A program made the position numbers and the translations under genes. A stretch of DNA of 64,000 bases from the IMG/VR virus record IMGVR_UViG_3300035182_002586, positions 1 through 64,000 of that record. One strand, 5' to 3'. The notes beneath the pieces are model-generated. The model made no database searches. It saw only the letters and a list, made by a program, of their open reading frames with translations, and was not told the DNA's origin. Positions 1 to 63,204 of this stretch are shown here, in pieces; the stretch's first letter is position 1; each line of letters opens with the position of its first letter.

Positions 1-786
1 TCACTCCTGACGCTCCAGCGTGATGCTGGCGAACGGGCAGAGGGTCTTGCGGAGGAGGAGCAGGCACCAGTCCTGGATGACGCCGATGACGAGGACGAGG
101 AGCTGGATCGCGAATACGGCGTCGAGCCTGATGTGCTTGTCTTCGGTGAGCATCATCGCACCGAGCCCGCCCTCGAAGCGCACGAGACCCTCGACCATGG
201 TGAGCATCACCCACCCCATGGCAGCGTTCTGCCGGATGATGTCGAGCACGGCGTCCATGCGACCGAGGATCACGACCTCAACGACCGACCCCCACGGCCC
301 CATGCGCAGCGTCCGGGCGTGATCGAACTCCTCTTTCGGGATCGACTCCACCACGTCGTAGAGGGACGTGAGCATGAACGCCCCCATCCCGAAGACCAAG
401 AGGGCGACCTTGAGGCCGTGACCTCCGCCGAACGTGATCGTGAAGAGCACCACGATTCCCGTCAGGCCGAGGAAGCGGAGCTTGCTGAGCACCCGCACGA
501 GCGGCCGCATGATCGGCAGCACCGTGAGGTAAGCGATCGGGAGCGTGAGCAGACAGGTGATAGCGATGGCCTGGAGGCTCGTCGACAGGCTCATGTAGAG
601 CTGGTTGAAGAGCCCTTGCGACAGGAGCGCAGGGTAGGCCGCGAAGACCTCTGCCGGCCCGGGAAGGAAGGGGGGCCGGCACGCCCACGCGCCGAGGAGC
701 GCGATGGACGTGCCGACGGCCAGCAGAAGCCTCGCCCTAGGGGAGATGCGACCGTTCGGCCGCCACATATCACGGAACGTGGACAC
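1..786 (-). CDS. ABC transporter permease (NitT/TauT/SsuC-like)
   Basis: Multiple hydrophobic helices; EAA-like loop (IPKEEFDHARTLRMG); C-terminal EG..GGLG motif typical of SsuC/TauC permeases. Confidence 0.85.
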   Translation of the reverse strand: MSTFRDMWRPNGRISPRARLLLAVGTSIALLGAWACRPPFLPGPAEVFAAYPALLSQGLFNQLYMSLSTSLQAIAITCLLTLPIAYLTVLPIMRPLVRVLSKLRFLGLTGIVVLFTITFGGGHGLKVALLVFGMGAFMLTSLYDVVESIPKEEFDHARTLRMGPWGSVVEVVILGRMDAVLDIIRQNAAMGWVMLTMVEGLVRFEGGLGAMMLTEDKHIRLDAVFAIQLLVLVIGVIQDWCLLLLRKTLCPFASITLERQE

Positions 787-970
787 TGGTTTCCTCCACC
801 ACAGCGTAGACGTTCACGATGTCAGAGGTCTCGGCGCCATTGCAGGGGCCGAAGTAGATCTCGGTGCAGCGATCGAGGCCCAACTCGTCGAGCCTACGGA
901 GGACATCCCCGTGGAGGTTACCGATCGGCATGGGACCCTCCACCGTGAGCACGTGTACGCGCTTCGTCAC
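770..970 (-). CDS. small hypothetical protein
   Basis: 66-aa ORF whose start overlaps the OmpA-gene stop (GTGA) and whose end overlaps the permease start. Confidence 0.5.
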
Positions 971-2763
971 GTGCCCGATCCCATGATGATCTCGACGCGA
1001 CGGTTCTTCGTACGGCCCGTGTCAGTGTCGTTCGTCGCGACGGGCTTGGTCTGGCCGAACGCTTTGACCGTGAAGCGGTCCGCCGGGAAGTTCGACGGCG
1101 ACTGCTTCATCAGCCACGACTTGACCGCTTCGGCGCGCGACTTCGAGAGGACCATGTTGCCCGCAGCGTCGCCCGTGTTGTCCGTGTGGCCGTCGATCTC
1201 GATGAGAAGGTCGGTGAGCACGAGGTCCTTCTCCAGCTCGCGGAGCGTCGCCTCGGTCTCCGGGGTGAAGCTCGCACTCCCCGACTGGAACGTGATGCTC
1301 CACGCGCGCTTGCTCACGACCTGCGCGATGGGCGCATCGGGCTTGTACTTGGGGAGGTCCGGGGCAGCCGTCTTGCCCGGGGCAGCCTTCTTGCCGAGGT
1401 TCGCCACGTAGGACGTGTCGAGGATGTCGTCGACCTTCGGGTAGGAGGGGACGAGCTTCGGGTACTGCTGGACGGCGATGTCGCCGAAGACCGTGTACGT
1501 AGCCGCGAACAGGTTCGAGCCACCCGGCGTGAGGCCGAAGACGTTCATCCCGTCCGCGAGGTTCAGCACGGCCGAGCCACCGAGGGTCACCTGGAGGCCC
1601 TGCTTGTCGGTCTCCGTGACGCCCTTGAAGTACTTCTCCCAGTAGTCCGCCGTCTCTTCCTTGTAGACCACCGCGCTGATCTCCGCAGCCTTACGACGGG
1701 CCTCGGGGAACGCGTTGATCTGATCCGCCGCCTCGAACGACGCCGAGAGCATCCCCTCGACCACATCGCGGTGGGCGCGGTCCCACTTCCGGATGCCGAT
1801 GATCGTCGTCGGCATCTGCGAGCGGTACTCCTTGGTGCTGACGATGCTGACGAGCCCGCCCTTCTCCTTGGCCACGTTCACATCGCCCGGCGTCCAGGTC
1901 ACCACGCCGTTGACGCAGACCTTCCGCGTCTCACCCGTCGGCTTGCCCGCATGCACGACCTTGCGGTCTTCGCAGGTGTTGAGGATGTACTTCTTCGAAG
2001 CGTCGAGGTACGTGTCCACGGCCACCCAGTTGAGCGCGTCCGGATCGTAGGTGGTCTCGTCGGGGTTGTTCGGGATGTTGTTGTCGCCGGCCCACTTCAT
2101 CGCGATGTTCCAGTCGCCGTCACGGAGCACGCCCGCGATGAGCCCGCCCTGCGCCGCCTTCGGGTTCGCCTTCCACTCGGGCGGACCCATGAACTTGTCT
2201 TCGCCGCGCGAGTAGCCGATCACGCCGACGACTTCCGCCGTACAGTCGGCGCAGATCTTCGCGAGGTCGGCGTTCACGCCCGCGAACCACGCGGGGGTGC
2301 CGTCGCCCATGAGGATCACGAAGTGCTGACCGTCCGTCGTGTCGGGGTTCTTCTGGATCCCCTTCGCGAACGCCATGAGCTGCGCCGCCATCTTGCTCGT
2401 GTCGTCCTCACGCGTGAAGTGCAGGTTGATGCCCTTCGCCGCCATGAGGGAGCCTTCGGTCGTGTCCTGGCCGCCGTTGGCGAACAAGATGCCGCTCTGC
2501 GCGTTCCAGGCCCACACCATCATGCGGACCGGCGTGCCCTTGCCCACCGGGTTCGCCCCCGGCAGAGCCGTCTTCGACACGGGGCCCGTCGGCGCCGCGT
2601 TGTCGGGCATGGTCGGCAACGCGGCTTGCTTCGGCACCTCGGCCGCCTTCTTGGGCGAGCCGATGATCCCGCTGGTCACGAGGTAGCGGAACGTCATGAA
2701 CAGGACGACGAAGATCGCGATGCCACCGAGGATCTTCGGGAGCGGTTTCACACGAGTAGCCAT
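967..2763 (-). CDS. membrane-anchored substrate-binding protein fused to C-terminal OmpA-like peptidoglycan-binding domain
   Basis: N-terminal TM; NMT1/SsuA-like core (SRGEDK, VTWTP); OmpA_C motifs [21 protein letters not shown]. Confidence 0.88.
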
Positions 2764-2790
2764 GGGTCAGCCTCTCTCTTCCTTCTGCAT

Positions 2791-3843
2791 CTAATACTGA
2801 CGGTTCTTGGCCTTGTCGGCCGGAGTCTGGAACAGGTCGTCGAACGCACTCACGCTGTGCGCGGGGAGGGCGTTGACGTGCGTGCCGGGGGGCGCTTCGA
2901 TGCGAAGACCGGGGGGCGCGGACGTGTTGGAGCCAAGGATGCTCGTGTTGCTCTGCTCCCACGCTTCGAGCTGCGCGAGGGCGTTGGCCTCGTAGATCCC
3001 GTTCTCCAGGTCCGCGGCACCGAGGACACCCTTCGAGGTCATCATGAAGGTCTCGATCTCGCCCATCTTCATGCCGTAGTCGTCGGCCAGGTGTTCGAGA
3101 GCCATGTCGAACATCTCCCGCTCGTCGCCACCGCCCTGCAAGATCTTCCGGGCGTTCGAGAACGCGCTGTAGCCCGCGAGGAGCGCCGCACGCTCCTTGG
3201 CACGCAGCTCGACCTCGTTGCTCATATCCTCGACCATCATCGCGGCCTTCGCACGAACGCGACGGAGCGTGTCGAAGAGCTTCTGGAAGTCGTTCATCGT
3301 CTTCTGGAGGGTCTTGTTCGACTCCGAGAGACGGTCGGCCTGTCTCGACTGTACGATGAAGGTATCCCGGTTCTCTTCGTTCGGCTGCTTTTTCGCCTGC
3401 TGCATCAGCGCGAGACAGTGCTGACGGGCTCGCTCGTTCTCCTCGATGTTCACGGCGAGCTTCTTGATCTGCCCACCGAGATTCGTGATCGAGGTGTCCA
3501 TCTCGTCACGGTGCGCTTCGAGCGTCTTGATGTACGTCTTGAGGACGCCGATGGGGTCGATCTCGATGAAGAAGCCCGTGAGGGTCCGCATCAGCGACTT
3601 GTACCCGTAGACCATCAGGTTGCGCCAACGCGGGTCGAAGAGAACGACGCCGATCACGGCGAGGATGCCTGCGAGCGCCACCGCCGTCAGCGTGTTCTCC
3701 AGCATCGTGACGACCCACGGGAGGATCGTCCCCCACATGTAGATCACGAGGCCCACGACGCATGCGCCAGCGCCCACCGTGAGCGCCGTACCGAACTTCC
3801 CCTCTGGCCGCGCGAGCCAGCTCTTCTGCTTTTCCACAGCCAT
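2791..3843 (-). CDS. two-TM coiled-coil protein, PspA/IM30-like
   Basis: Two N-terminal TM helices, then DP-starting long heptad coiled coil as in PspA-family proteins. Confidence 0.6.
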   Translation of the reverse strand: MAVEKQKSWLARPEGKFGTALTVGAGACVVGLVIYMWGTILPWVVTMLENTLTAVALAGILAVIGVVLFDPRWRNLMVYGYKSLMRTLTGFFIEIDPIGVLKTYIKTLEAHRDEMDTSITNLGGQIKKLAVNIEENERARQHCLALMQQAKKQPNEENRDTFIVQSRQADRLSESNKTLQKTMNDFQKLFDTLRRVRAKAAMMVEDMSNEVELRAKERAALLAGYSAFSNARKILQGGGDEREMFDMALEHLADDYGMKMGEIETFMMTSKGVLGAADLENGIYEANALAQLEAWEQSNTSILGSNTSAPPGLRIEAPPGTHVNALPAHSVSAFDDLFQTPADKAKNRQY

Positions 3844-3846
3844 GAA

Positions 3847-4530
3847 TCACCCCTTCGCCAATGCGTCGATGTGGGACTTCTGATCGTTGAGGCGCCCGAC
3901 GACCTGCGCGTGCGCGGCCTCGAAGCCCATGCGGATGCTGTCGAGCCGGTGCTGCTCCTCCTGGAGGTGCGAGGTGTCCAGCGCGAGCTTCGACTTGAGC
4001 GAGACGATCTCGTCTTCGATCGCCCTGAGCTGGCTCTCCCTCGACTGGAGAAGGGATTCGGTCGACGCGATGGCTTCCTTCGCCGCACTTTCGACCTTGG
4101 AGGTCTGCGCCTGGAATCCGCGCAGGAACTCTTCCTGCGCCTTGTCCATGGTGTTGATGAGCTGATCGACGGCACCCGAGAGCTGCACGGGCGTCGCGTT
4201 GCTCGTCTTGAGCGCGGCCTTGAACCGCATGGACTCGTCGGGAATGACCTCGGCGAGCTGCGTGTACTTCTCCATCCACGTCGAGTAGACGGGAGGCAGC
4301 GCCGCCTGGAGCATCGCTTCGAGCTTCGCCATCGCCGCGGGGTCCGCCGCCACGGCCGCCTGGGCCGGGCGAGGGGCGACGGATGCGCTCCCCGGCGGAG
4401 GCATGGGCGCCTGGCTCTCCCTGGCCTTGGCAGCTTTGGGTTGTGCCTGCCCTTCGGGCACCTCTTCGACGAAGGCGCTCTTGATGAAGCCGAGGAACCC
4501 GCCGCCGCTCTTCTCGTTCTTGTCCGACAC
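3847..4530 (-). CDS. coiled-coil protein, first gene of envelope cassette
   Basis: GTG start at 4530 with purine-rich RBS; N-terminal amphipathic GFLGFIKSAF; C-terminal coiled coil. Confidence 0.7.
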   Translation of the reverse strand: MSDKNEKSGGGFLGFIKSAFVEEVPEGQAQPKAAKARESQAPMPPPGSASVAPRPAQAAVAADPAAMAKLEAMLQAALPPVYSTWMEKYTQLAEVIPDESMRFKAALKTSNATPVQLSGAVDQLINTMDKAQEEFLRGFQAQTSKVESAAKEAIASTESLLQSRESQLRAIEDEIVSLKSKLALDTSHLQEEQHRLDSIRMGFEAAHAQVVGRLNDQKSHIDALAKG

Positions 4531-4645
4531 GTCTACCGCCTTTCCACGGATGCTCCCGAGGGAGCTGCCCTTAGATACACCGGCCGGAGGGCTCGGTAGG
4601 ATCAACAGGCGTGGGAAGGCAAGAGACAGAACCCTCAGAACGGAA

Positions 4646-8086: not shown

Positions 8087-8104
8087 GCAGACCCCCTACA
8101 CCGG

Positions 8105-9771: not shown

Positions 9772-10671
9772 ATGGCCCCCGGAATGGTTCTTCGAGTTGC
9801 TGCCCGGTTCCAGGTTGAAAACCAGGAGGGGCGGGTACGGCTTGCAGCTAAGTACAAGGGCAAGACAGTTTCCGAAGAAGGGAACGTCATCTACCAGTAC
9901 AGTGAACGGCAGATCGCACTCCGCAACAAGGCGAAGGCCGAGAAAATCGAGGGCCTGAAAAGGCACATCGGTGACCTTCGGGCGACCGTCAAGAAAGATC
10001 TCCGCTCGGAAGATCCCGAGACGATGTTGACAGCACTCGCGGTGGCCTTGATGGACCACACGTTCGAGAGAGTCGGCAACGAGGAGTCAGCCAAGGACGG
10101 GCACGTTGGAGTGACTGGCTGGGCAAAAAAGCACATCAGCTTCGGCAAAAAAGTCACCGTCAGGTACGTCGGAAAGTCCGGCGTGAAGCACACAAAAGAG
10201 ATTACAGACGCGGGCCTAAAGAAGGCGCTCCGTGACGCCTATGAAGCGGTCGATGGGGACAACGAAAGCATCTTCTCGTGGGACGGCGGAAAGGTAACGG
10301 CCGAGAAGGTCAACGCCTACTTGGAGGAGTTTGGCATCACTGCGAAGGACATCCGAGGCTTCCACGCGAATGACACGATGCACGAGGCCCTACGAGCTGC
10401 ACGCAAAGCAGGCGGAAAGCTCCCCGAGGACAAGAAAGCTAGGGAGAAGCAACTCAAGGAGGAGTTCAAGAAAGCTCTCGAAGAGACGGCGGATGTCGTC
10501 GGCCACGAGCCTGCGACCCTCCGTTCACAGTACTTGGTCCCGGGGCTAGAGTCGGACTACCTACGGGACGGTACGATAACGGACTCTTTCATCAAGTCCT
10601 CTTCCAGTCTTGCAGCACGCGTCGTCGACCGTTATCTTAGGGTGCATGAAGTGGGTGATCTACGTCCTTGA
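9772..10671 (+). CDS. DNA topoisomerase IB (bacterial/viral type catalytic core)
   Basis: RVGNE, GKSG, KDIR, GHEPATLRSQY match the R-K-R-H/N-Y catalytic pentad of type IB enzymes. Confidence 0.85.
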   Translation: MAPGMVLRVAARFQVENQEGRVRLAAKYKGKTVSEEGNVIYQYSERQIALRNKAKAEKIEGLKRHIGDLRATVKKDLRSEDPETMLTALAVALMDHTFERVGNEESAKDGHVGVTGWAKKHISFGKKVTVRYVGKSGVKHTKEITDAGLKKALRDAYEAVDGDNESIFSWDGGKVTAEKVNAYLEEFGITAKDIRGFHANDTMHEALRAARKAGGKLPEDKKAREKQLKEEFKKALEETADVVGHEPATLRSQYLVPGLESDYLRDGTITDSFIKSSSSLAARVVDRYLRVHEVGDLRP

Positions 10672-17849: not shown

Positions 17850-17871
17850 GGCGGCGACGCGTACACCGATT

Positions 17872-21779: not shown

Positions 21780-21968
21780 CTACACCGGGTTCAGCGGTGG
21801 AGTGTTCTTGCGTGCTGCCTCACGGCGACGGGCCAGAGCCTCCAGGATGCGCCCGAACAAGTTCTGAGGGATCCCGGCGCGGCGAACCATGTCGACGCGC
21901 TCTCTTGTCTGTGCTTCGGCGTCCGCGCCGTCAGCTTGCGCCCACCACGGGGTTTCCTCGGTTTTCAC
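21780..21968 (-). CDS. small hypothetical protein
   Basis: GTG 12 nt after GGTGTA. Confidence 0.5.
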   Translation of the reverse strand: MKTEETPWWAQADGADAEAQTRERVDMVRRAGIPQNLFGRILEALARRREAARKNTPPLNPV

Positions 21969-41102: not shown

Positions 41103-41831
41103 ATGTACGCAACTACTACTCGCCAGAGCGCAACGCCGATCCTCTACCTTCGCCGGGTCTACGCCTGGCTCCTCGCCGGCATCGCGCTGTCGGGTCTCGG
41201 CGGGTACGCCGCGCTCAATGTGGGGTCGCCGGTCCACACGACCATCGACAGACACGACGTTCTCGTCGCCCCCGTCGTCGCGATGATGAGTGCGCACCCC
41301 ATCCTCTCGGGGTTCCTCCTCATCGCCATGACCTTCCTCACGATGGCCGTACGGAAGGCTGAGGGCATGAACGCCGTCGCCTTCTTCATGCTCACGCTGT
41401 TCGCAGGCGCGTTCGTCGCCCCGCTCATCGTCTTCGCGCAGGCAAAGGCGGCCGCGGGGACCTCCCTGACCTCCCACCCCGTACGTGACGCGTTCATGCT
41501 CACGTCGGCCGCGTTCGTCGGGCTCACGTCCTACACGATGGTGACGAAGAGGGACTTCTCGTATCTTCGTGCCGGGCTCGTGGCCGGATTGTGGGTGCTC
41601 CTCGTCGCCCTGATCATCGGGATGCTCCTCGGGTCCAGCGTGTACAGCCTCGCTGTGTCGTCGATGGCCGTCCTGCTCTTCTGCGGGTTCATCATCCTGG
41701 ACACGAGCAAGGTCTTGCGGTCGTCGGACCGCGATGATCCGGTCGGTGACGCCCTCAATCTGTATCTCGACGTTCTGAACATCTTCGTGCACCTGCTCTC
41801 GATCTTCGCAGGCGGCTCGAACCGTGACTGA
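41103..41831 (+). CDS. Bax inhibitor-1/YccA family membrane protein
   Basis: About 7 TM helices; YLRRVY, KRDFS, ILDT, ALNLYLDVLNIF; GGAGG RBS. Confidence 0.92.
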   Translation: MYATTTRQSATPILYLRRVYAWLLAGIALSGLGGYAALNVGSPVHTTIDRHDVLVAPVVAMMSAHPILSGFLLIAMTFLTMAVRKAEGMNAVAFFMLTLFAGAFVAPLIVFAQAKAAAGTSLTSHPVRDAFMLTSAAFVGLTSYTMVTKRDFSYLRAGLVAGLWVLLVALIIGMLLGSSVYSLAVSSMAVLLFCGFIILDTSKVLRSSDRDDPVGDALNLYLDVLNIFVHLLSIFAGGSNRD

Positions 41832-41837
41832 ACAACG

Positions 41838-42029
41838 TCACGCCTCCGGGGGTAGAAACCCCCGGGTGACGAGAACGGCACCGTCCGGAGAGAAGACCCG
41901 GGCTTTGCCCTTCGTGCTGAGGAAGTAGCGGAGCATCTTCTCGGGGTCGTCGAACGTCCTGTCCGCCTCTCCTGGCTGACGAACGAGGTACCCCTGGAGA
42001 ACCCTACTCGGGGGTTCCGACGTGCTCAC
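41838..42029 (-). CDS. small hypothetical protein
   Basis: Protein-like C-terminal part of the 41838..42638 frame; start uncertain. Confidence 0.4.
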   Translation of the reverse strand: MSTSEPPSRVLQGYLVRQPGEADRTFDDPEKMLRYFLSTKGKARVFSPDGAVLVTRGFLPPEA

Positions 42030-42957
42030 GTCCAGCCTCGTACGCGAAGAGCAGGTGCTCGAACATCGAGTAGGGGTTGGGGTCACCCTCGGAGAGACGG
42101 AGAGAGAACCCGGCGGCCTTCGTGTGGCCTCCGCCACCGTGGGACCGTGCGAACGAAGAGCAGTCGAAGTTCGTGTGTGATCGCGTGGAGAAGACCAGAA
42201 TCCGCTTCCCGTCCTCCACGCGATAGGAGAACCCGACCACGAGGTCGGCCTCTTGGTCCAGGGTCTCTGCGGCGAAGGACGAGTGGGACAACCCCTCGAA
42301 GAGGACGACCCTCGTACCGTTCGTCGTCGTCGTGAAGCGATGCGCCTCCGCGATGGACTTCGAGGTCCTCTTGTCCTGGCTCGCGATCTTGGCCTCGCCC
42401 ACCCACTTGAACCGGGTGTCCCACGAAGCCGCGATCTCGGAGAACGGGAGCTGGAGCCAGAAGCTCTGCGTCGGGAAGGTGAGGATGGCCTGCTGCACGC
42501 GCGCAGCCTCCCACTCGGGGCTCTGGCGCTGCCACGTGTCGAAGACGCCTGCGAGCATCGCGAACCGCTCGGCGAAAGCACTCTGCTTCCCCATGGGCTT
42601 GCAGATGTGCTCGTAGACGAGACTTGCCCCGCAGACACCGGGCTGCGTCTTCTCGTCGCCGAAGCGACCGTTCTCCCCGAAGGACTCGACCAGGGCTTTC
42701 GCGGTCTTGTGGTGATCGAGAACGATCGAGCCGGCTTCTACGAAGTACCTTGCCCGATCAGGGTGCGGTGAGAAGTCGGCGAACAGGATGCCGGCCTCCG
42801 CCTTCATGAGCTTGTGAGCGTCCGTCGAGTACTGGACGAACTCCACCGTCGCCCACGGAAGAGCCTCGTGCGCGAGGATGGCGCTGGCCGTCCCGTCCGC
42901 GCAATTGTCGTGAACCACGATCTTCGTGACGGCCTTGAGCTTTTCGAGATCGAACAT
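42004..42957 (-). CDS. DHH/DHHA1 phosphoesterase (NrnB-like)
   Basis: H..C.DG, DFS, LDHH, DTW, GGGGHTKAAGF. Confidence 0.85.
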   Translation of the reverse strand: MFDLEKLKAVTKIVVHDNCADGTASAILAHEALPWATVEFVQYSTDAHKLMKAEAGILFADFSPHPDRARYFVEAGSIVLDHHKTAKALVESFGENGRFGDEKTQPGVCGASLVYEHICKPMGKQSAFAERFAMLAGVFDTWQRQSPEWEAARVQQAILTFPTQSFWLQLPFSEIAASWDTRFKWVGEAKIASQDKRTSKSIAEAHRFTTTTNGTRVVLFEGLSHSSFAAETLDQEADLVVGFSYRVEDGKRILVFSTRSHTNFDCSSFARSHGGGGHTKAAGFSLRLSEGDPNPYSMFEHLLFAYEAGREHVGTPE

Positions 42958-43002
42958 GGGTGCGCCCGTACACCAGGCACACCCATGTTCGGCCCTTCTA
43001 GA

Positions 43003-43287
43003 TCAGGTCGTCGTAGAAGACGTCCCGCCGACGCTGGCTTCGATCGCGACGGCCTTCGGCGAGGGCTCCTCGAACTTGGTCTCCGACTTCGAGGTGAGGG
43101 TGGCGCCGTTCGGAAGCACGACCTCCAGCTTCAAGCACCACGACACGGGCTTCTCCGAGACCTTCTCGGCCTCCTGCATGACTTCCGCCCACGCGTCTTG
43201 CAGGTTCTTGTGGATGTCTACCTGACGCGCCTCCAGGTGCTCGGCGGTCGTCATCTTCAACGGCTCATTTTGTGCGGTCATGCCCAT
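43003..43287 (-). CDS. hypothetical protein
   Basis: GGAGG RBS; GGTGTA upstream. Confidence 0.55.
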   Translation of the reverse strand: MGMTAQNEPLKMTTAEHLEARQVDIHKNLQDAWAEVMQEAEKVSEKPVSWCLKLEVVLPNGATLTSKSETKFEEPSPKAVAIEASVGGTSSTTT

Positions 43288-51406: not shown

Positions 51407-52297
51407 TCAGGCCGCTACGGCGCGTTTGGAGACGGGCAGGAACTCTGACCCGTACTCGTTCATGAAGCGGAGCAGCCCACCCTGGTCGAGGATGTCCTGG
51501 TAGAACGTGCCCGGGACCGTGGGGTTCATCTCCCACGTGCAAAGGCGCACCGAAGTGGAGATACGGTCCAGCTTCTCGTTGAAGAATCGGTAGAACTGCC
51601 CCTGCTTCTCCCCAGCGCTGGACAGGGCGACCATCGAGGGGCCGGGAAGGCTTGACCCCACCACCGAAGGAAGCACAGCCTGGTAGAGGTCGGTACCACC
51701 ATCGTCGTGGTAGTACGCCATCTCGTCGAAGAGGACGAAGCTGTGCCGCACCCCGCAGAGACCCTTGAACCCGGCTGAACGCACCGTGATTCTCACGGAC
51801 GAGTTGTGGGTCTTGCAACCGCACACACAGTGGTTGGGGCTCGGGATCTGGATGGAGGAGGTCGTCTCCTGCGAGGGGGTGACGTGGCCCTCACGGACCG
51901 CCTTGCGGACCCCTTTCATCATGGTCTGAGCCATGGCGCGGTCGATCGTGAACCCGGCCACCGTCATCGCGCCGGGGTCCCGCTCCGCCTGCGCGAGTGC
52001 CGCCATCGCACGCTGGTAGAGCAGACGTGCCCCGAGGTAGGACTTGCCCGACCGGCGACCCGCTGCGAGGGCAACGAGTTGCTCCTCCGAGTTCACCTCA
52101 CGGGTGTTGGAGCGCCCCTCGTCGTAGAGGTAGACGAGGAAGTCCTTCTCCGTGAACAACCGCACGCGTCCGGTCAGGGGATGGGTGAACTCGACCCGAT
52201 CCGTATCTGACAGAGGAACCCCGTCCAGTACTTTCAAGGCGAATCGCTGACCGGGGTAGAGAGGGTACGCCCTCTCCGCGTGCTCGATGGTGTTCAT
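51407..52297 (-). CDS. ATPase-only paralog of terminase large subunit
   Basis: LYPGQRF, LYDEGR.N.RE, GRRSGKS, FDEMA, LSS, TWEMNP, F..EYG..F are colinear with the N-terminal half of TerL at 61177..63204. Confidence 0.8.
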   Translation of the reverse strand: MNTIEHAERAYPLYPGQRFALKVLDGVPLSDTDRVEFTHPLTGRVRLFTEKDFLVYLYDEGRSNTREVNSEEQLVALAAGRRSGKSYLGARLLYQRAMAALAQAERDPGAMTVAGFTIDRAMAQTMMKGVRKAVREGHVTPSQETTSSIQIPSPNHCVCGCKTHNSSVRITVRSAGFKGLCGVRHSFVLFDEMAYYHDDGGTDLYQAVLPSVVGSSLPGPSMVALSSAGEKQGQFYRFFNEKLDRISTSVRLCTWEMNPTVPGTFYQDILDQGGLLRFMNEYGSEFLPVSKRAVAA

Positions 52298-52307
52298 GCA
52301 GAAGGTC

Positions 52308-53165
52308 TCAGTGCCAGACGGAGTGGTGAACGTCGTAGTCCACCTTGTTGCTCTTGAGCCAATCACTGAACTTGGCCCAGGCGATCGACTTGAGGGCGCC
52401 CGGGTTCTCCTTGAGGAGCTTGTAGAGCTTGCGAGCGCTCGTCGGCTTGCCCTCGTAGAGCGTGTAGTGAGGGTCACCGCTGTGGCCCATGTCGGAGTCC
52501 GGCGAGTAAGCGGACCACTTCGTCCACTCGATGTGGACCGTGAAGTCCTTGCCCTCGGCGTTGAACGGGTCGACGTTCTCCGGAGTCACCTCCAGGAAGT
52601 AGACCTGCTGCTCCCACCAAGAGGTGCGACGAAGGAAGTCCCACGACCCAGGCTTGACGCCCTGGATCGCGTCGGCCTTCTTGATCACCTCGTCGGCAGC
52701 GTCCGCCATCCCCTGGCTGACCTTTTCCTTCACCTGGTCGTAGGTATCCGACGCGGAGATGTGCTGCCTCCGGATGATGTTGTCCGGAATGAAGGCGTCG
52801 AAGTTACCGTGCTGGCTGAAGTGCAGGTTGGTCTGCACCGTCGCGACACGGAGCTTGCGCTTGCCCTTCATCGGCAGCTCTTCCAGCTTCCACTGGTCGT
52901 GCGTCCACGAGAGGCGGAAGTCCTTGCCGACGAGCTTGCCGTCCCACGAGCCCTGGAGGAACTTCGCTGCGACGCGGACCGCTGCCCCACCGTTCGTGAG
53001 CCCCGACGCTTGCTTCGTCAGGTACTCGTCCTGGTGGCAGGAGTCCGAGCCCGGGTTGACGTTCTTGCAGTAGATCGACCATGCGGTCGCCCATGCCTGC
53101 TCGTCCGAGTAGGACGGGTTGCCTTCCTTCACTTCCTTGAAGTAGTCGTCGACAGGCTTCGGCAT
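52308..53165 (-). CDS. hypothetical protein with internal RVAAKF tag
   Basis: AGGAG RBS; ChaB-like N-terminal helix (EQAWATAWSIY). Confidence 0.75.
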   Translation of the reverse strand: MPKPVDDYFKEVKEGNPSYSDEQAWATAWSIYCKNVNPGSDSCHQDEYLTKQASGLTNGGAAVRVAAKFLQGSWDGKLVGKDFRLSWTHDQWKLEELPMKGKRKLRVATVQTNLHFSQHGNFDAFIPDNIIRRQHISASDTYDQVKEKVSQGMADAADEVIKKADAIQGVKPGSWDFLRRTSWWEQQVYFLEVTPENVDPFNAEGKDFTVHIEWTKWSAYSPDSDMGHSGDPHYTLYEGKPTSARKLYKLLKENPGALKSIAWAKFSDWLKSNKVDYDVHHSVWH

Positions 53166-54554: not shown

Positions 54555-55877
54555 TCAACCCGTCGCTTCGGCCGGCGTAACGACGATGAGAGGGCGACGC
54601 GTGACCTCCGCCGCCTTCTCGCCTTTCACGACATCCGCCGTAACGGTGATCGAAGCGATCGTCGCGTCGCTAGGGGCATCGAACGAGTAGGGGCGAAGCA
54701 GGTCCTCGACGATCGACCGGAGGGCTCGGGCACCCGTCGGACGCGACTTCGCGAGGCGGCCGATCTCCAAGAGTGCGTCGTCCGTGAACACGAGGTCGAT
54801 GTTGTCGTAGGCAAAGAGGGCTCGGAACTGCTTGATGATCGAGTGCTTCGGCTCCGTGAGGACGCGCACCATGTCCGTGTCCGTCAGCGGGAGCGTCGAC
54901 GTGCGGACCGGGAGGCGGCCGAGCAGCTCGGGGATGATCCCGAAGTCCAGGATGTCCTCCTCCGTGATCGCCGAGTACACGTCGGTGAGGTCGAGCTTGC
55001 GCTTCGTACTCTCGTTGGCCCCGAAGCCCAAACGGGAACTCTTGTTGATGCGACGGTCGACCGTCTCCTGGATACCGTCGAACGACCCCGCGCAGACGAA
55101 CAGCACGTTGGTGGTGTCCAGCATGTCGAGGCTCGGTTTGGCCGTCCCGTCCGCGCCGATCGTGATGACAGTGCCGCCCTTCCCCATGCCGCGAGGCACC
55201 GGGACCATCGAGCCCTCGATGAGCTTGAGGAGGGACTGCTGCACGCCCTCTCCGCTCACGTCTCGGTAGCCGGAGGCGCCGCGCCCCGACTTGCGCGCGA
55301 GCTTGTCGAACTCGTCGATGAAAATGATGCCCCACTGCGCCTTCTCCGGGTCGCCGTTGGCCGCCTGGAGGAGCCCCTGGAGCATGCTCTCCACGTCGTC
55401 CCCCACGTATCCCGCCTGCGTCAGGCGGGTCGCATCGGCCACGTAGAAGGGCACCTTGAGCATCCGGGCGATGGCCCGGAACAGCTCGGTCTTGCCCGTA
55501 CCGGAGGGCCCGAGGAGCATGATGTTGCTCTTCTGGATCTCGACCCCTTCGGCCTTCTCGATCTTCGCGGCACGAGCACGGTCTCGCCGCTTGAAGTGGT
55601 TGTAGACCGCGACGGCCACGTCCTGCTTCGCTCGCTCTTGGGCGATGACGTGCTGGTCGAGAAACGCCTTGATCTCCCGGGGCTTGCGGAGCGGCTCTTC
55701 CTTGACCGTGGCCTTCTGACGGTGACGGTTCTCCGCCTCCATCGCCTCAGCGATCTCCCCGTTGCAACGGTCGCAGATCAGGACTTCGCCGCCCTGCTTG
55801 AGCGGTGCCGCGATGAGGTTGCGCACCTCGTTGCTGGCACGGTGGCAGACGTTACAGCGAAGGATCTCGTTGGCCAT
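54555..55877 (-). CDS. clpX: ATP-dependent Clp protease ATP-binding subunit ClpX
   Basis: C4 Zn domain, KSNI.LLGPSGTGKT, AGYVGDDVE, DEFDK, RDVSGEGVQQ, LGF loop, TGARALR. Confidence 0.95.
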   Translation of the reverse strand: MANEILRCNVCHRASNEVRNLIAAPLKQGGEVLICDRCNGEIAEAMEAENRHRQKATVKEEPLRKPREIKAFLDQHVIAQERAKQDVAVAVYNHFKRRDRARAAKIEKAEGVEIQKSNIMLLGPSGTGKTELFRAIARMLKVPFYVADATRLTQAGYVGDDVESMLQGLLQAANGDPEKAQWGIIFIDEFDKLARKSGRGASGYRDVSGEGVQQSLLKLIEGSMVPVPRGMGKGGTVITIGADGTAKPSLDMLDTTNVLFVCAGSFDGIQETVDRRINKSSRLGFGANESTKRKLDLTDVYSAITEEDILDFGIIPELLGRLPVRTSTLPLTDTDMVRVLTEPKHSIIKQFRALFAYDNIDLVFTDDALLEIGRLAKSRPTGARALRSIVEDLLRPYSFDAPSDATIASITVTADVVKGEKAAEVTRRPLIVVTPAEATG

Positions 55878-55898
55878 GGGGGATCTTACACCGGGGGT

Positions 55899-61176: not shown

Positions 61177-63204
61177 TTACCGGCGGAACCGGAGACCGAG
61201 GCTCTTCGGGACGGCCCGCTCCGAGAAACCCCCGTGCATACGGGCTCGGGAGAGCTGATAGGCCCCCGTTCCCGCCGCCCGCGAGATGGTCGGTGTGGCT
61301 GTTGCTCCGTAAAGCGCGCGCCCTTGACCGAGCCTCTCCACAGAGAGCCAGACCGAACGTACAAGGGCGTCGCTCATGTCGTCGTGCTTGCCCTTCGGGG
61401 CCTCGACTTCGACGATGTTCTTGCTCACCTGCTCGGCTTGGAGAGTCATCAGCTCTGTGATGAGCGGGGAGTGCTTCAAGTTGTCCCCCACGCCTGCCGG
61501 GGGCGGCCAGTCGTAGAGACGAAGCTTGCGGTCGTACATGAGCAGCTTCGTCGCCTGGAACATCTGCGACGTGTCCATCTTCTGGAAACGCTCAGACCGG
61601 AACTGCTTGAGGCCGCGCTTGTGGAGGTTCTGCTCCAGTGAGAGCCCCTCCCACCGGTCGAAGATGACGTCGGTGATGTAGAAGCGCCTGCACATCACCT
61701 CCATCCAGTTGGCGATCTCGTCGAAGTCGAGGCGCTCCACGTCCCGGAGCGTGCGTGCGTACGGCGTCGTGAACTCGGTCAGGTGGGGGTTGGACTCCCG
61801 CCAGTCCGTACCCGCGTACCAGACCTCGTGATAGTCGATGACGATCACGTCGTCTTCCACGTGGGAAAGCACGAAGGCCGTACCGTCGCCGACAGCCGCG
61901 ACGTCGAGACCGCCCTGGTGCGGTGCCCGGGGGATGCCCTGGAGCCTCGGGCGATGCTCGGGGTCAATACAGGCGAGGAGGTCCTCGGGGCGTTCGATCC
62001 ACCCGCGCATACGGTCGGAGAAGCGCGCCCCGTGCTCCACCATGAAGCTGTTCGGGTCCGCGTGGAACCGCTGCCGGTAGTAGCTGATGGGGACCGACGG
62101 GTTGATCTCCCACGTCGGCATCTGGAGAGCGAGCATGTTCTCGGACCCCTCTCCCCTCGACATCGCGAGGTTGAAGAGGTCGAAGAACTGTCCCTGCTTG
62201 TTCAGGGGGGACGAGATGCAGATGATGCGGCTCTCGACCGGGTAGTCCGTCCCGTCGGGGTGCTTGAGCACCATCCCGTCCGGACCCTTCGGAGAGAAGG
62301 TCGCTGCGGAGGGCTGGACCGCCTTGTATATCTCCTCGGCCGAGGACCCACCTTCGTCGATGAAGTGAGCCATCTCGTCGAGGATGATGACGATGTTGCC
62401 CATACCACGGAGGCCCTTCGCGATACAGGGGCGGAACGTGACCCTGATCGAGGACTTGCCGTTGTAGCTGACGAACTTCCCGTCGGCGTGGCGGTTGTAC
62501 GTGCCGAAGGTGTCGAGGTCGAACGGTGTCTGGAGGTCTACGAACGTCTTGTTGTCGGAGAGCTTGTACGGGTGGAAGTACTCGCACCGCGCCATGTGAT
62601 TCGAGACTTCGCGGAAGAGAATCGCCGCCTGCTCCTTATCGGTAGCGACGCTGACGATCTGGATGGTGTTACCGTCCGGGAGACCGTAGTACTCCTGGGG
62701 GTTGTACATATTCAAGAGGCGGTAGACCTCGTACGAGGCGAAGATCGACGAGAGCATGGTCTTGCCCCCGCGACGCCCGATGGCGAGCACCAGCTCGCGT
62801 CGTTCGTGGTCCTGCTCTCGGATGTTGCAGCGTCCCTCGTCATAGAGGTGCCGCAGGTACTCCACCTCCGTGAAACGCCCTACGAGGTTCTCACGGAACA
62901 TGTCCCAGATCTCGATCGTCTTCTCCTTGTCATCGAGAGGGATGTGGTAGTAGAGCTTCACAATGAAGCGCTGGACTGGATAGAGCTTCCGATCCAGACC
63001 CCACTTGGACTCGATGTAGTCGATGACTGAGAAGATCTTGGGCTTCTTCGGCTGCGCCTGTCCTGTTGGGACGGGCATCATGGACGCGAGGTAGTCGTCG
63101 ACCTGAGGATCCTCGGTCCCGGTCCTCTCTGCTTCGACTTTGGCTTCTTGTGCGGCTTGGCGGAATAGCCCCGCCATCCCGCTGCCGCGTTTCGTGGCTG
63201 CCAT
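61177..63204 (-). CDS. terL: terminase large subunit
   Basis: Walker A GRRGGKT, Walker B IILDEMAH, ISSP, nuclease GLDVAAVGD, FD, HDDMSDA. Confidence 0.9.
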   Translation of the reverse strand: MAATKRGSGMAGLFRQAAQEAKVEAERTGTEDPQVDDYLASMMPVPTGQAQPKKPKIFSVIDYIESKWGLDRKLYPVQRFIVKLYYHIPLDDKEKTIEIWDMFRENLVGRFTEVEYLRHLYDEGRCNIREQDHERRELVLAIGRRGGKTMLSSIFASYEVYRLLNMYNPQEYYGLPDGNTIQIVSVATDKEQAAILFREVSNHMARCEYFHPYKLSDNKTFVDLQTPFDLDTFGTYNRHADGKFVSYNGKSSIRVTFRPCIAKGLRGMGNIVIILDEMAHFIDEGGSSAEEIYKAVQPSAATFSPKGPDGMVLKHPDGTDYPVESRIICISSPLNKQGQFFDLFNLAMSRGEGSENMLALQMPTWEINPSVPISYYRQRFHADPNSFMVEHGARFSDRMRGWIERPEDLLACIDPEHRPRLQGIPRAPHQGGLDVAAVGDGTAFVLSHVEDDVIVIDYHEVWYAGTDWRESNPHLTEFTTPYARTLRDVERLDFDEIANWMEVMCRRFYITDVIFDRWEGLSLEQNLHKRGLKQFRSERFQKMDTSQMFQATKLLMYDRKLRLYDWPPPAGVGDNLKHSPLITELMTLQAEQVSKNIVEVEAPKGKHDDMSDALVRSVWLSVERLGQGRALYGATATPTISRAAGTGAYQLSRARMHGGFSERAVPKSLGLRFRR

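What the first reader, a model, noticed from the sequence alone, without database searches (positions are those of the whole stretch)
1..4581. Phage-borne envelope cassette: coiled-coil + TM/PspA-like + SBP-OmpA fusion + ABC permease
Seen: five tightly coupled genes behind a GGTGTA motif. The substrate-binding domain is tethered at both ends, by an N-terminal TM helix and a C-terminal peptidoglycan-binding OmpA domain, which is atypical for nutrient ABC importers. Known: PspA/IM30 proteins remodel stressed membranes. Inference: a membrane-sensing or sealing machine (superinfection exclusion, lysis delay or PMF maintenance) rather than simple uptake. The ABC ATPase is expected just left of the window.
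Basis: partly seen in the sequence, partly recalled or inferred. Interest (0 to 1): 0.6.

Follow-up and report, generated by a model that had tools for sequence, protein, structure and literature searches.

The report
Huge-phage PspA-like membrane module plus ABC importer
A roughly 0.6-megabase phage carries a conserved operon that pairs a membrane-anchored relative of the bacterial membrane-repair protein PspA with an ABC importer whose binding protein is pinned to the cell wall; the same operon recurs in many giant phages, but its bacterial counterpart and its phage occurrence have already been noted in print.

Summary
All genes are on the minus strand. They are a 227-aa coiled-coil protein, a 350-aa two-TM protein, a 598-aa TM–binding-protein–OmpA fusion, a non-conserved 53-aa ORF and a 255-aa permease. 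The predicted ABC ATPase follows directly on the untrimmed 620-kb parent contig.

The 350-aa protein is a divergent PspA/IM30 (ESCRT-III superfamily) member:
- Vipp1/PspA are its top fold matches.
- hhalign against cassette PspAs gives 87% probability.
- 22 of 100 family representatives hit Pfam PspA_IM30.

The binding domain has the TauA/NrtA/CmpA fold. The element is a true phage, with TerL and portal in the window.

The five-gene order recurs in about 65 viral contigs (31–64% GC), in Lak megaphages and in LR756500. The cultured Ralstonia phage RsoM2USA keeps only the coiled-coil/TM-PspA pair.

Bacteria carry a homologous operon (X–PspA–PBP/OmpA–permease–ATPase–TM-Snf7–AAA+), described by Ravi et al. 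2024. A 2026 preprint reports huge-phage pspA next to ABC transporters.

Verdict: a real, conserved phage version of a known but uncharacterised kind. The function (membrane maintenance coupled to solute import) is inferred. The ligand is unknown.

The parts
4576..4581 (-). GGTGTA motif upstream of the first cassette gene
   Evidence: Exact match. The window holds 37 copies against 10.5 expected. Genome-wide the motif usually sits 9-12 nt before start codons. Here it is 46 nt before GTG 4530, so its role for this operon is uncertain.
3847..4530 (-). CC227: cytoplasmic protein with an N-terminal amphipathic segment, a Pro/Ala-rich linker, a helical domain and a C-terminal coiled coil. It is the homologue of gene 'X' that precedes pspA in bacterial PspA-ABC operons.
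   Evidence: The JGI gene call is 227 aa. No TM segment. No Pfam, NCBIfam or PHROG family. Family alignment A3. hhalign of A3 against the bacterial family A4 gives prob 96%, E 1e-9; against PspA, 5%. It sits next to the TM-PspA gene in 42 of 46 and 24 of 24 viral loci.
2791..3843 (-). TME350: two N-terminal TM helices followed by a cytoplasmic PspA/IM30 (ESCRT-III superfamily)-like domain (helices 71-95, 97-152, 156-235, 241-274, 281-304), a disordered linker and a conserved C-terminal aromatic-x-x-L-F motif.
   Evidence: AF2 model, pLDDT 76. TM windows at 27-45 and 51-69, and the C-terminal motif in 38 of 40 relatives. Foldseek top hits are Vipp1/PspA. VIA gives Vipp1 Z 13.0 with 203 residues aligned, model 74-309 against chain 2-215. 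hhalign against cassette PspAs: 80% and 87%, E 1.5e-5 and 4e-6. 22 of 100 family representatives hit PF04012, best E 7e-8.
967..2763 (-). TM-anchored substrate-binding protein fused to an OmpA-like peptidoglycan-binding domain: signal-anchor helix, Pro-rich linker, NitT/TauT-type class II binding domain (~77-470), OmpA domain (491-588).
   Evidence: AF2 model, pLDDT 84.6. Foldseek matches: TauA 6ssy, NrtA 2g29 and CmpA 2i49 (TMt 0.63-0.69), and OmpA domains (TMt 0.8-0.9). PF00691 E 4e-20. The GHTD...R motif is invariant at D528 and R543. The binding domain has no sequence match in PDB.
770..931 (-). Small 53-aa ORF between the binding protein and the permease. It is not a conserved cassette member.
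   Evidence: The JGI gene call. No relatives in about 130 related loci. A related groundwater strain joins 785->976 with 47 other letters in its place. No TM segment.
1..768 (-). ABC importer permease, 255 aa, multi-TM, with an EAA-like coupling loop. The stop codon is at window 1-3. The partner ATPase (277 aa) lies outside the window at L004:12790-13623.
   Evidence: BPD_transp_1 E 4.9e-4, below cut-off. SaoP 4e-11, TauC 3e-5, SsuC. Hydropathy and the EEFDHARTLRMGPWG loop. The ATPase has Walker A GPSGVGKT, signature LSGGQRQR, Walker B LILDEP and an H-loop.

Best explanation
This is the huge-phage version of the bacterial 'PspA-linked ABC importer' operon.

Shown:
1. A NitT/TauT-type type I ABC importer, made of a permease and a catalytically intact ATPase.
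2. Its binding protein is held in the periplasm by an N-terminal membrane anchor and a C-terminal OmpA-like peptidoglycan anchor.
3. A membrane-anchored, divergent PspA/IM30 (ESCRT-III superfamily) protein whose helical domain faces the cytoplasm.
4. A partner protein with an N-terminal amphipathic segment and a coiled coil, homologous to the gene that precedes pspA in the bacterial operons.

Inferred: during the long infection of a very large phage, the TM-PspA protein and its partner coat or stabilise the cytoplasmic face of the host inner membrane, limiting leakage and keeping the proton-motive force. The importer, working at the same membrane, takes up one particular small periplasmic solute that bacteria and phages have both kept under strong selection.

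The phage version has dropped the separate soluble PspA, the TM-Snf7 protein and the two-domain AAA+ ATPase of the bacterial operon. Disassembly or regulation would therefore fall to host factors, or to the conserved C-terminal motif of the TM-PspA protein. The ligand is unknown.
For: Parts.
- Fold and profile evidence for PspA-likeness.
- The iterated TME350 HMM retrieves bona fide PF04012 proteins of bacterial cassettes, and the reverse search also works.
- The binding-protein fold and OmpA domain.
- ATPase motifs and permease family matches.

Coupling.
- The order CC-TME-SBP-permease-ATPase is kept in 42 of 46 viral loci found through the SBP.
- It is kept in 22 of 24 loci found through TME350, at 31-64% GC.
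- It is also kept in Lak-A1 and LR756500.
- The bacterial operons b234-PspA-SBP/OmpA-permease-ATPase-b330-AAA+ occur in several arrangements in Acidobacteriota, Myxococcota and Armatimonadota.
- These match the operon published by Ravi et al. 2024.

Homology and conservation.
- CC227 is homologous to bacterial gene X.
- The transporter genes are the most conserved: median 44-48% identity among phage loci, against 27-30% for CC227 and TME350.

Phage context.
- TerL and portal are in the window.
- Phage-like genes continue 19 kb beyond the IMG/VR cut.
- A preprint finds pspA next to complete ABC systems in 15 huge phages.
- RsoM2USA, which keeps the CC-TME pair, has a 270-min latent period.
Against: - No experiment exists on any member, bacterial or viral.
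- No RNA run holds the sequence, so expression is not shown.
- The window's own 350-aa protein does not reach any Pfam threshold.
- Structural Z-scores for Vipp1 (13.0) stand only slightly above unrelated helical hairpins (11-12).
- Co-folding of CC227 with TME350 gave no verdict.
- The CC-TME pair also occurs without the transporter (RsoM2USA, L146, L160), so the two halves can work apart.
- The AAA+ ATPase thought to drive remodelling in the bacterial operon is missing from the phage cassette.
Confidence: 0.6

Rival explanations
1. An ordinary auxiliary metabolic gene set. The ABC importer simply brings in a nutrient of the NitT/TauT range (nitrate, bicarbonate, taurine or sulfonates, a thiamine precursor) to feed replication of a very large genome. 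The two helical proteins are accessory or unrelated.
For: - The transporter genes are the best-conserved part.
- The closest folds are nutrient-binding proteins: TauA, NrtA, CmpA.
- The permease and ATPase best match TauC/SsuC and CysA/TauB-type models.
- PHROGs files such ATPases under 'moron, auxiliary metabolic gene'.
Against: - The helical genes stay glued to the transporter, in the same order, from 31% to 64% GC phages and in bacteria, where a true PspA takes that position.
- The binding domain matches no characterised binding protein by sequence.
- The peptidoglycan anchor is not a feature of the known NitT/TauT importers matched here.
Confidence: 0.15
2. A superinfection-exclusion or lysis-timing device. 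The membrane proteins alter the envelope to block DNA entry by competing phages, or to hold back lysis.
For: - All products act at the envelope.
- The cassette sits among replication and recombination genes rather than structural genes.
- PspA-type proteins counter membrane damage of the kind that holins and secretins cause (established knowledge of the Psp response).
Against: - A homologous operon is chromosomal in hundreds of bacterial species, where exclusion of phages is not an obvious role.
- PADLOC was not searched. No defence-system signature was seen in Pfam or NCBIfam.
- Nothing ties the ATP-driven importer to exclusion.
Confidence: 0.1
3. A membrane-sculpting device. The TM-anchored ESCRT-III-like protein bends or buds the host inner membrane to build a phage-specific membrane structure (vesicle or compartment). 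The transporter supplies or senses a solute for it.
For: - ESCRT-III superfamily proteins remodel membranes (papers listed).
- The family is large, with 1,464 clusters at 50% identity.
- It is tied to very large phages.
Against: - No structural or imaging data exist.
- The AAA+ partner that powers remodelling elsewhere is absent from the cassette.
- Bacterial homologous operons argue for a housekeeping or stress role.
Confidence: 0.1
4. Not phage-borne at all: the cassette belongs to host DNA flanking an integrated prophage, as the IMG/VR 'provirus' label might suggest.
For: - IMG/VR classes the record as a provirus. Its left boundary falls exactly at the permease stop codon.
- Bacteria carry related operons.
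Against: - The cut splits an operon.
- The 19 kb beyond it hold small ORFs without families, endonuclease VII, an RF-1 domain protein, EF-Ts and an RNB nuclease, with no bacterial housekeeping block.
- The cassette is of the CC-TME type that sits deep inside other 200-480 kb viral contigs and in Lak phages.
- In the tree it groups with viral sequences, outside the bacterial clade.
Confidence: 0.03

Closest known systems
Bacterial PspA / AAA+ / ABC / PBPB-OmpA operon (Ravi et al. 2024, mSystems, PMC11237479; example OGG56892.1)
   Same: - A TM-anchored binding protein with an OmpA domain, one permease and one ABC ATPase.
- An upstream helical gene 'X' (CC227 is homologous: prob 96%).
- A PspA-family protein directly before the binding protein.
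- The binding proteins are 51-57% identical to the phage protein.
   Different: - The phage PspA-family protein carries two TM helices and is far diverged: below Pfam threshold, with hhalign 80-87%.
- The TM-Snf7 protein ('b330') and the two-domain AAA+ ATPase are absent from the phage cassette.
- The bacterial operon itself has never been tested experimentally.
Huge-phage pspA neighbourhoods (Yuan & Chen, bioRxiv 2026, 10.64898/2026.10.24.761521)
   Same: It reports 189 pspA genes in 184 huge phages and 667 IMG/VR genomes. 15 of the pspA genes lie next to complete ABC systems (binding protein, ATPase, permease). It proposes membrane-stress mitigation.
   Different: - The main text does not describe the OmpA fusion, the TM anchor on the PspA-like protein, the CC227 partner, the link to the bacterial operon, or the presence of the cassette in Lak phages.
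- Whether its 15 cases are this same cassette could not be checked.
Classical PspA / Vipp1(IM30), ESCRT-III superfamily
   Same: - Collinear helices alpha0-alpha5, with a long alpha1-alpha2/3 hairpin.
- A conserved 'DP' break before alpha1 that aligns with the PspA N-terminal motif.
   Different: - A two-TM membrane anchor precedes the region that aligns with the amphipathic helix alpha0.
- There is an extra disordered tail with an aromatic-x-x-L-F motif.
- No PspBC or PspF partners were seen.
NitT/TauT-family ABC importers (TauABC, SsuABC, NrtABCD, CmpABCD)
   Same: - The binding-domain fold.
- The permease and ATPase family matches.
- The layout of one permease and one ATPase.
   Different: - The binding domain has no detectable sequence relation to any solved binding protein.
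- It is fixed to both the membrane and peptidoglycan.
- The substrate is unknown.
OmpA-like peptidoglycan anchors (Pal, MotB, YiaD, TssL/TagL)
   Same: A C-terminal PF00691 domain with the conserved Asp/Arg pair.
   Different: Here it is fused to a solute-binding domain. No such fusion appeared among the solved structures searched.

Membership tests
PspA/IM30 - ESCRT-III superfamily (for the 350-aa protein) | Long alpha1-alpha2/3 helical hairpin followed by alpha4 and alpha5, collinear with Vipp1/PspA | tested here: met
   AF2 helices at 97-152, 156-235, 241-274 and 281-304. Vipp1 7o3w: Z 13.0, 203 residues aligned, model 74-309 against chain 2-215. Vipp1/PspA are the top Foldseek hits. Caveat: unrelated hairpins reach Z 11-12.
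PspA/IM30 - ESCRT-III superfamily (for the 350-aa protein) | Sequence-profile match to PspA_IM30 (PF04012) | tested here: inconclusive
   The window's own protein has no hit. 22 of 100 family representatives hit PF04012 at E<=0.01 (best 7e-8), and no other family exceeds 2 members. hhalign against bona fide cassette PspAs gives 80% and 87%, E 1.5e-5 and 4e-6, over 188 columns.
PspA/IM30 - ESCRT-III superfamily (for the 350-aa protein) | N-terminal amphipathic helix alpha0 as the membrane-binding element, with no TM segment | tested here: not met
   Two hydrophobic TM windows (27-45, 51-69) precede the region that aligns with alpha0. This is a variant architecture.
PspA/IM30 - ESCRT-III superfamily (for the 350-aa protein) | Self-assembly into rings, rods or carpets, and membrane remodelling or protection | not testable with these tools
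   Needs purified protein, electron microscopy and liposome assays.
Type I ABC importer, NitT/TauT group | ABC ATPase with Walker A, Q-loop, signature, Walker B and H-loop | tested here: met
   GPSGVGKT, VPQ, LSGGQRQR, LILDEP and SHD in L004:12790-13623. PF00005 is on record. The best NCBIfam matches are CysA, PhnT, TauB and SaoA types, all below equivalog cut-offs.
Type I ABC importer, NitT/TauT group | Permease of the BPD_transp_1 fold with an EAA coupling loop | tested here: inconclusive
   PF00528 scores E 4.9e-4, 20.3 bits against a cut-off of 26.4. SaoP 4e-11, TauC 3e-5. An EAA-like loop was seen by eye.
Type I ABC importer, NitT/TauT group | Binding protein of the TauA/SsuA/NrtA class | tested here: inconclusive
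   Met at the fold level: TauA, NrtA, CmpA with TMt 0.63-0.69 and Foldseek E 4e-10 to 5e-9. Not met at the sequence level: no PDB, Pfam or NCBIfam match for the domain.
OmpA-like peptidoglycan-binding domain (PF00691) | Profile match over the gathering threshold, and the conserved Asp/Arg pair that contacts the peptide stem | tested here: met
   72.4 bits against a cut-off of 27.2. D528 and R543 are invariant in 30 relatives. Structural TMt 0.8-0.9 to OmpA, TagL and YfiB domains. Actual binding was not tested.
Bacterial PspA-AAA+-ABC-PBPB/OmpA operon (Ravi et al. 2024) | PBPB+OmpA binding protein, permease and ABC ATPase in one operon with a PspA-family gene and the upstream gene X | tested here: met
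   Gene order in the window and L004. CC227 is homologous to X. TME350 is related to the cassette PspA.
Bacterial PspA-AAA+-ABC-PBPB/OmpA operon (Ravi et al. 2024) | Two-domain (inactive + active) classical AAA+ ATPase and a TM+Snf7 protein in the operon | tested here: not met
   Neither lies within +/-6-8 kb in the window or in almost all viral loci. The exceptions with an AAA+ nearby are L037 and L152. TME350 is not similar to the TM+Snf7 family. A lone AAA+ gene lies 315 kb away in this genome.

The most novel reading that the evidence does not exclude
The cassette is a self-contained, ligand-gated membrane-repair machine of giant phages. The wall-tethered binding protein and importer report or import a periplasmic signal. 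The signal may be a divalent cation or a cation-anion complex, as with the Ca2+-bicarbonate ligand of CmpA; the invariant Asp/Asn-rich loops DGDWN and NNPDE hint at this. That input switches polymerisation of the membrane-anchored ESCRT-III-type protein. If so, this would be a viral and bacterial counterpart of calcium-triggered ESCRT-III membrane repair, conserved from Lak gut megaphages to soil phages.
Probability: 0.1. Interest if true: 0.8.

Novelty: new member of a known kind. Interest (0 to 1): 0.45.

Why it matters
Giant phages occupy their hosts for hours, and how they keep the host envelope working is largely unknown. This cassette is one of the few multi-gene modules kept in the same order across huge phages of very different hosts: Lak phages of Prevotella, sediment and soil phages at 64% GC, and many contigs in between. 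It descends from, or shares ancestry with, an uncharacterised bacterial PspA-linked transporter present in hundreds of species.

It defines a large unnamed branch of the PspA/ESCRT-III superfamily, with at least 1,464 clusters at 50% identity, that carries its own membrane anchor. The cultured phage RsoM2USA (gp55-gp54) gives an experimental handle. Finding the ligand of the wall-tethered binding protein would explain both the phage and the bacterial systems.

Tried and rejected
- ATPase search in the trimmed genome. PF00005 gave only weak P-loop matches, because IMG/VR had cut the contig. This was solved with the parent contig.
- Pairwise BLASTP. Comparing the phage helical proteins with the bacterial cassette proteins showed nothing. 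Profiles were needed.
- Tool failure. Protein comparison on A2 against A5 failed internally. hhalign was run in the Python box instead.
- CC227 as a second PspA. Rejected: hhalign 5%.
- TME350 as the bacterial TM+Snf7 ('b330') protein. Rejected: hhalign 2-5%. In my hands b330 also shows no profile similarity to PspA.
- PDB sequence searches. CC227 and b234 give only generic coiled coils. The binding domain alone gives nothing. TME350 gives nothing significant.
- PHROGs. No family for CC227, TME350 or the binding domain.
- Atlas look-alikes. Only unnamed clusters. The nearest named one for TME350 is a viral PspA/IM30 cluster at 0.77, which is a lead only. The Atlas's own poor model matches chemoreceptor hairpins.
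- Co-folding. CC227 with TME350(75-350) gave no verdict, so it is evidence neither way.
- Expression. No RNA run holds the stretch. Only DNA contigs were laid.
- Promoter and terminator scan. Nothing above shuffles.
- Ligand inference from pocket residues.
- Genetic code. In one script the Lak-A1 locus was read with TAG as a sense codon. The five ORFs contain no in-frame TAG, so the result does not depend on that code.
- The 1137-aa plus-strand ORF. Rejected as an antisense artefact.

Full report
WHAT IS THERE

The window is the first 64 kb of an IMG/VR record of 528,957 bp at 64% GC. IMG/VR labels the record 'provirus'. It was cut from a 620,031-bp sediment-metagenome contig.

In this high-GC DNA many frames are open. 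The real genes of 1-4605 are on the minus strand, where third-position GC is 0.81-0.93 and second-position GC is 0.37-0.46. The 1137-aa plus-strand ORF does not pass that test.

In order of transcription the genes are:
- CC227, 4530->3847.
- TME350, 3843->2791.
- The 598-aa fusion, 2763->967.
- A 53-aa ORF, 931->770.
- A 255-aa permease, 768->1.

The gaps between them are 3, 27, 35 and 1 nt.

It is 277 aa, starts 26 nt after the permease stop, and has Walker A, Q-loop, signature, Walker B and H-loop intact. The next gene is on the other strand, so the operon ends there.

The IMG/VR boundary therefore cuts an operon in two. The next 19 kb hold small ORFs without families, endonuclease VII, an RF-1-domain protein, a deacetylase, EF-Ts and an RNB nuclease. 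That is huge-phage-like content, not a bacterial chromosome. Terminase large subunit and portal lie at 57-63 kb of the window. The cassette is phage-borne.

THE PARTS

The 598-aa protein.
- It has one N-terminal hydrophobic helix and no lipobox, followed by a Pro-rich linker.
- Its central domain in a confident AF2 model (pLDDT 84.6) matches TauA, NrtA and CmpA, with TM-scores of 0.63-0.69 by target.
- Its C-terminal OmpA domain scores 72 bits against PF00691, with the Asp/Arg pair invariant.
- The binding domain has no detectable sequence relative among solved structures or in Pfam or NCBIfam, so the ligand cannot be read off.
- It is nevertheless very conserved, with 56-84% identity among the best 120 database relatives.

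The permease and ATPase. Their best matches are TauC, SsuC, SaoP and CysA, TauB, SaoA-type models, all below equivalog cut-offs. The permease has an EAA-like loop.

TME350. It has two TM helices and then an all-helical cytoplasmic domain. Five lines of evidence make it a divergent PspA/IM30 protein:
1. Foldseek's top hits are Vipp1 and PspA. In the VIA second look, Vipp1 aligns collinearly over 203 residues (model 74-309, chain 2-215, Z 13.0). Unrelated hairpins align over only 120-140 residues at Z 11-12.
2. hhalign of the family against the bona fide PspA proteins of the bacterial cassettes gives 80% (E 1.5e-5). With a broader alignment it gives 87% (E 4e-6) over 188 columns. The family's conserved 'IDPIG' motif lies on the PspA N-terminal 'E-x-PE' motif.
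3. Of 100 diverse family representatives, 22 hit PF04012 (best E 7e-8). No other Pfam family is hit by more than 2.
4. An iterated family HMM picks up PF04012 proteins of Thermoanaerobaculia cassettes, and the reverse search also works.
5. It occupies the position that PspA has in the bacterial operon.

The family is large: 1,464 clusters at 50% identity, of which 698 score E<=1e-30. It has no Pfam or PHROG model. Its C-terminus carries an aromatic-x-x-L-F motif in 38 of 40 relatives, after a disordered linker.

CC227. It has no TM segment. It consists of an N-terminal amphipathic stretch, a Pro/Ala-rich linker, a helical domain and a coiled coil. It is homologous to the gene that precedes pspA in the bacterial operons (hhalign 96%, E 1e-9) and is unrelated to PspA.

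The 53-aa ORF. It is not conserved. In a related groundwater strain 47 other letters stand in its place.

RELATIVES AND CONTEXT

Viral contigs found through the binding protein. Searching IMG/VR gave 46 loci. Of these, 42 show the order CC227-TME350-SBP-permease-ATPase. Fourteen of the contigs exceed 200 kb and 27 exceed 100 kb.

Viral contigs found through TME350. This search gave 24 loci at 25-64% GC.
- 22 loci (31-64% GC) carry the whole cassette.
- Two low-GC loci (25% and 27%) carry only the CC-TME pair.

GenBank phages.
- LR756500 (462 kb) and Lak-A1 carry the whole cassette. TME350 homologues are present in all 15 Lak records.
- The cultured jumbo phage RsoM2USA has only the pair, gp55-gp54.
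- The Lak ORFs have no in-frame TAG, so this does not rest on a recoded reading.

Conservation gradient. Median identity to the window's proteins across phage loci is 47% for the SBP, 44% for the permease, 48% for the ATPase, 30% for TME350 and 27% for CC227.

Bacteria. In one genome per species, 439 genomes encode a relative of the binding protein. They are mainly Acidobacteriota, Myxococcota and Armatimonadota, and include multi-megabase contigs. Their operons read b234-PspA(PF04012)-SBP/OmpA-permease-ATPase-b330-AAA+, or rearrangements of the same genes. This is exactly the operon listed by Ravi et al. [quoted passage not shown]

Mis-binned contigs. Contigs with the phage-type cassette also sit in MAGs assigned to Acidobacteriota, Saccharimonadales, Limnocylindria and Cybelea, yet their SBP sequences are nearly identical. 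I read these as mis-binned phage contigs. That is an inference.

Tree of the binding protein. The bacterial PspA-type sequences form one clade with SH-aLRT support of 99. All phage-type sequences lie outside it in several deep lineages. The root is unknown, so no direction of transfer is claimed.

What the phage cassettes lack. They lack the AAA+ ATPase and b330. Two loci have an AAA+ gene nearby, and this genome has a lone AAA+ gene 315 kb away.

PRIOR WORK

Ravi et al. proposed a link between PspA/Snf7-AAA+ membrane remodelling and solute transport for the bacterial operon, without experiments. A preprint of October 2026 reports 189 pspA genes in huge phages, 15 of them beside complete ABC systems, and suggests membrane-stress mitigation. 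No experimental study of either version was found.

HOW IT MOST LIKELY WORKS

Shown: the architecture and homologies above, and the tight, ancient linkage of the two halves.

Inferred:
- TME350, already fixed in the inner membrane, and CC227 assemble on the cytoplasmic face and protect or reshape the membrane.
- The importer takes up one specific periplasmic solute. Its receptor is fixed between membrane and wall.
- In a phage with a very long cycle this keeps the host membrane energised until lysis. RsoM2USA, for example, has a 270-min latent period.

Rivals, with evidence and confidence, are listed in their own section: a plain nutrient importer, exclusion or lysis timing, membrane sculpting, and host flank.

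THE GGTGTA MOTIF

The motif is real. It is enriched 3.5-fold in the window. Genome-wide, 133 of 332 copies lie 6-16 nt before the start of a long high-GC3 ORF, with a peak at 9-12 nt. The median for permuted hexamers is 7%. At this operon it lies 46 nt upstream of the likely start, so its role here is open.

OTHER CHECKS

- Near-identical DNA occurs in microbial-mat metagenomes from other studies, and a 90-96% relative occurs in groundwater.
- No RNA data were available.
- Co-folding gave no verdict.

VERDICT

The functional reading is plausible but untested. This is a well-conserved phage member of a kind already described computationally, with useful new detail: the TM-anchored PspA branch, the homology of CC227 to gene X, the loss of AAA+ and TM-Snf7, the presence in Lak phages, and a culturable model phage.

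Noticed in passing
whole genome G000; in the window e.g. 8097-8102, 17862-17867, 21781-21786, 42969-42974, 55887-55892 (all minus strand): (C)GGTGTA is a gene-start signal of this phage. 117 copies lie 9-12 nt before the start codon of a long high-GC3 ORF. Only a weak preference for C at -1 (0.64 at gene-start sites) extends the consensus. The fixed spacing suggests a translation-initiation or very short-leader promoter element unlike a standard Shine-Dalgarno site.
   Followed up: partly
window position 1 (= parent contig Ga0373636_0000001 position ~90,622); L004 and L162: The IMG/VR/CheckV 'provirus' boundary falls between the permease and the ATPase of one operon. At least the first 19 kb of the 90.6 kb removed as 'host' look like phage DNA (endonuclease VII, RF-1 domain protein, deacetylase, EF-Ts, RNB nuclease, many small ORFs). 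The element is probably a ~620-kb phage genome rather than a provirus.
   Followed up: partly
window 770-931 (minus strand): The small 53-aa ORF between the binding protein and the permease is strain-specific. A groundwater relative has 47 other letters in its place. Many related phage loci have variable inserts of 0.3-1.7 kb between the three transporter genes.
   Followed up: partly
window 51407-52477 and 61177-63204 (minus strand): Two separate ORFs match terminase large-subunit families: 356 aa (phrog_2, E 6e-10) and 675 aa (phrog_2/9/17415). This may be a second terminase-like ATPase or nuclease, or a split gene.
   Followed up: no
window 9772-10671 (plus strand): A type IB (eukaryotic/poxvirus-like, PF01028) topoisomerase gene, as precomputed for the parent contig.
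   Followed up: no
window 15573-39619 (minus strand): A dense block of DNA-transaction genes: Dam-type and N4/N6 methyltransferases, a PD-(D/E)XK nuclease, an Mre11/Rad50-like pair, RecA, a RecD2-type helicase and an NAD-dependent ligase. A ClpX-like AAA+ gene lies at 54555-55877.
   Followed up: no
G000:C1:315125-316723 (L161:5126-6724, minus strand): A lone classical AAA+ ATPase (532 aa, PF00004 at 281-409) with the same N-domain-plus-AAA layout. It is 26% identical across the AAA domain to the AAA+ of the bacterial PspA-ABC operons. It could be the missing partner of the cassette.
   Followed up: partly
L012 (IMGVR_UViG_3300044957_000763, 478,840 bp): This 'viral' contig carries the bacterial-type arrangement (SBP-permease-ATPase with a b234 gene downstream, and no CC-TME pair). 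It groups with Chthonomonadales in the tree. It may be bacterial DNA or a provirus flank.
   Followed up: no
L086, L098, L099, L106, L117, L120, L123, L126, L130 (genome contigs): Nearly identical phage-type cassettes sit in MAGs assigned to Acidobacteriota, Saccharimonadales, Limnocylindria, Cybelea and Terriglobia. This is most simply explained by huge-phage contigs binned into bacterial MAGs.
   Followed up: no
L135 (Ralstonia phage RsoM2USA, MG752970: gp55 42444-43079, gp54 41514-42440): A cultured 344-kb phage carries the CC227-TME350 pair without the transporter. Both genes are annotated 'hypothetical protein'.
   Followed up: partly
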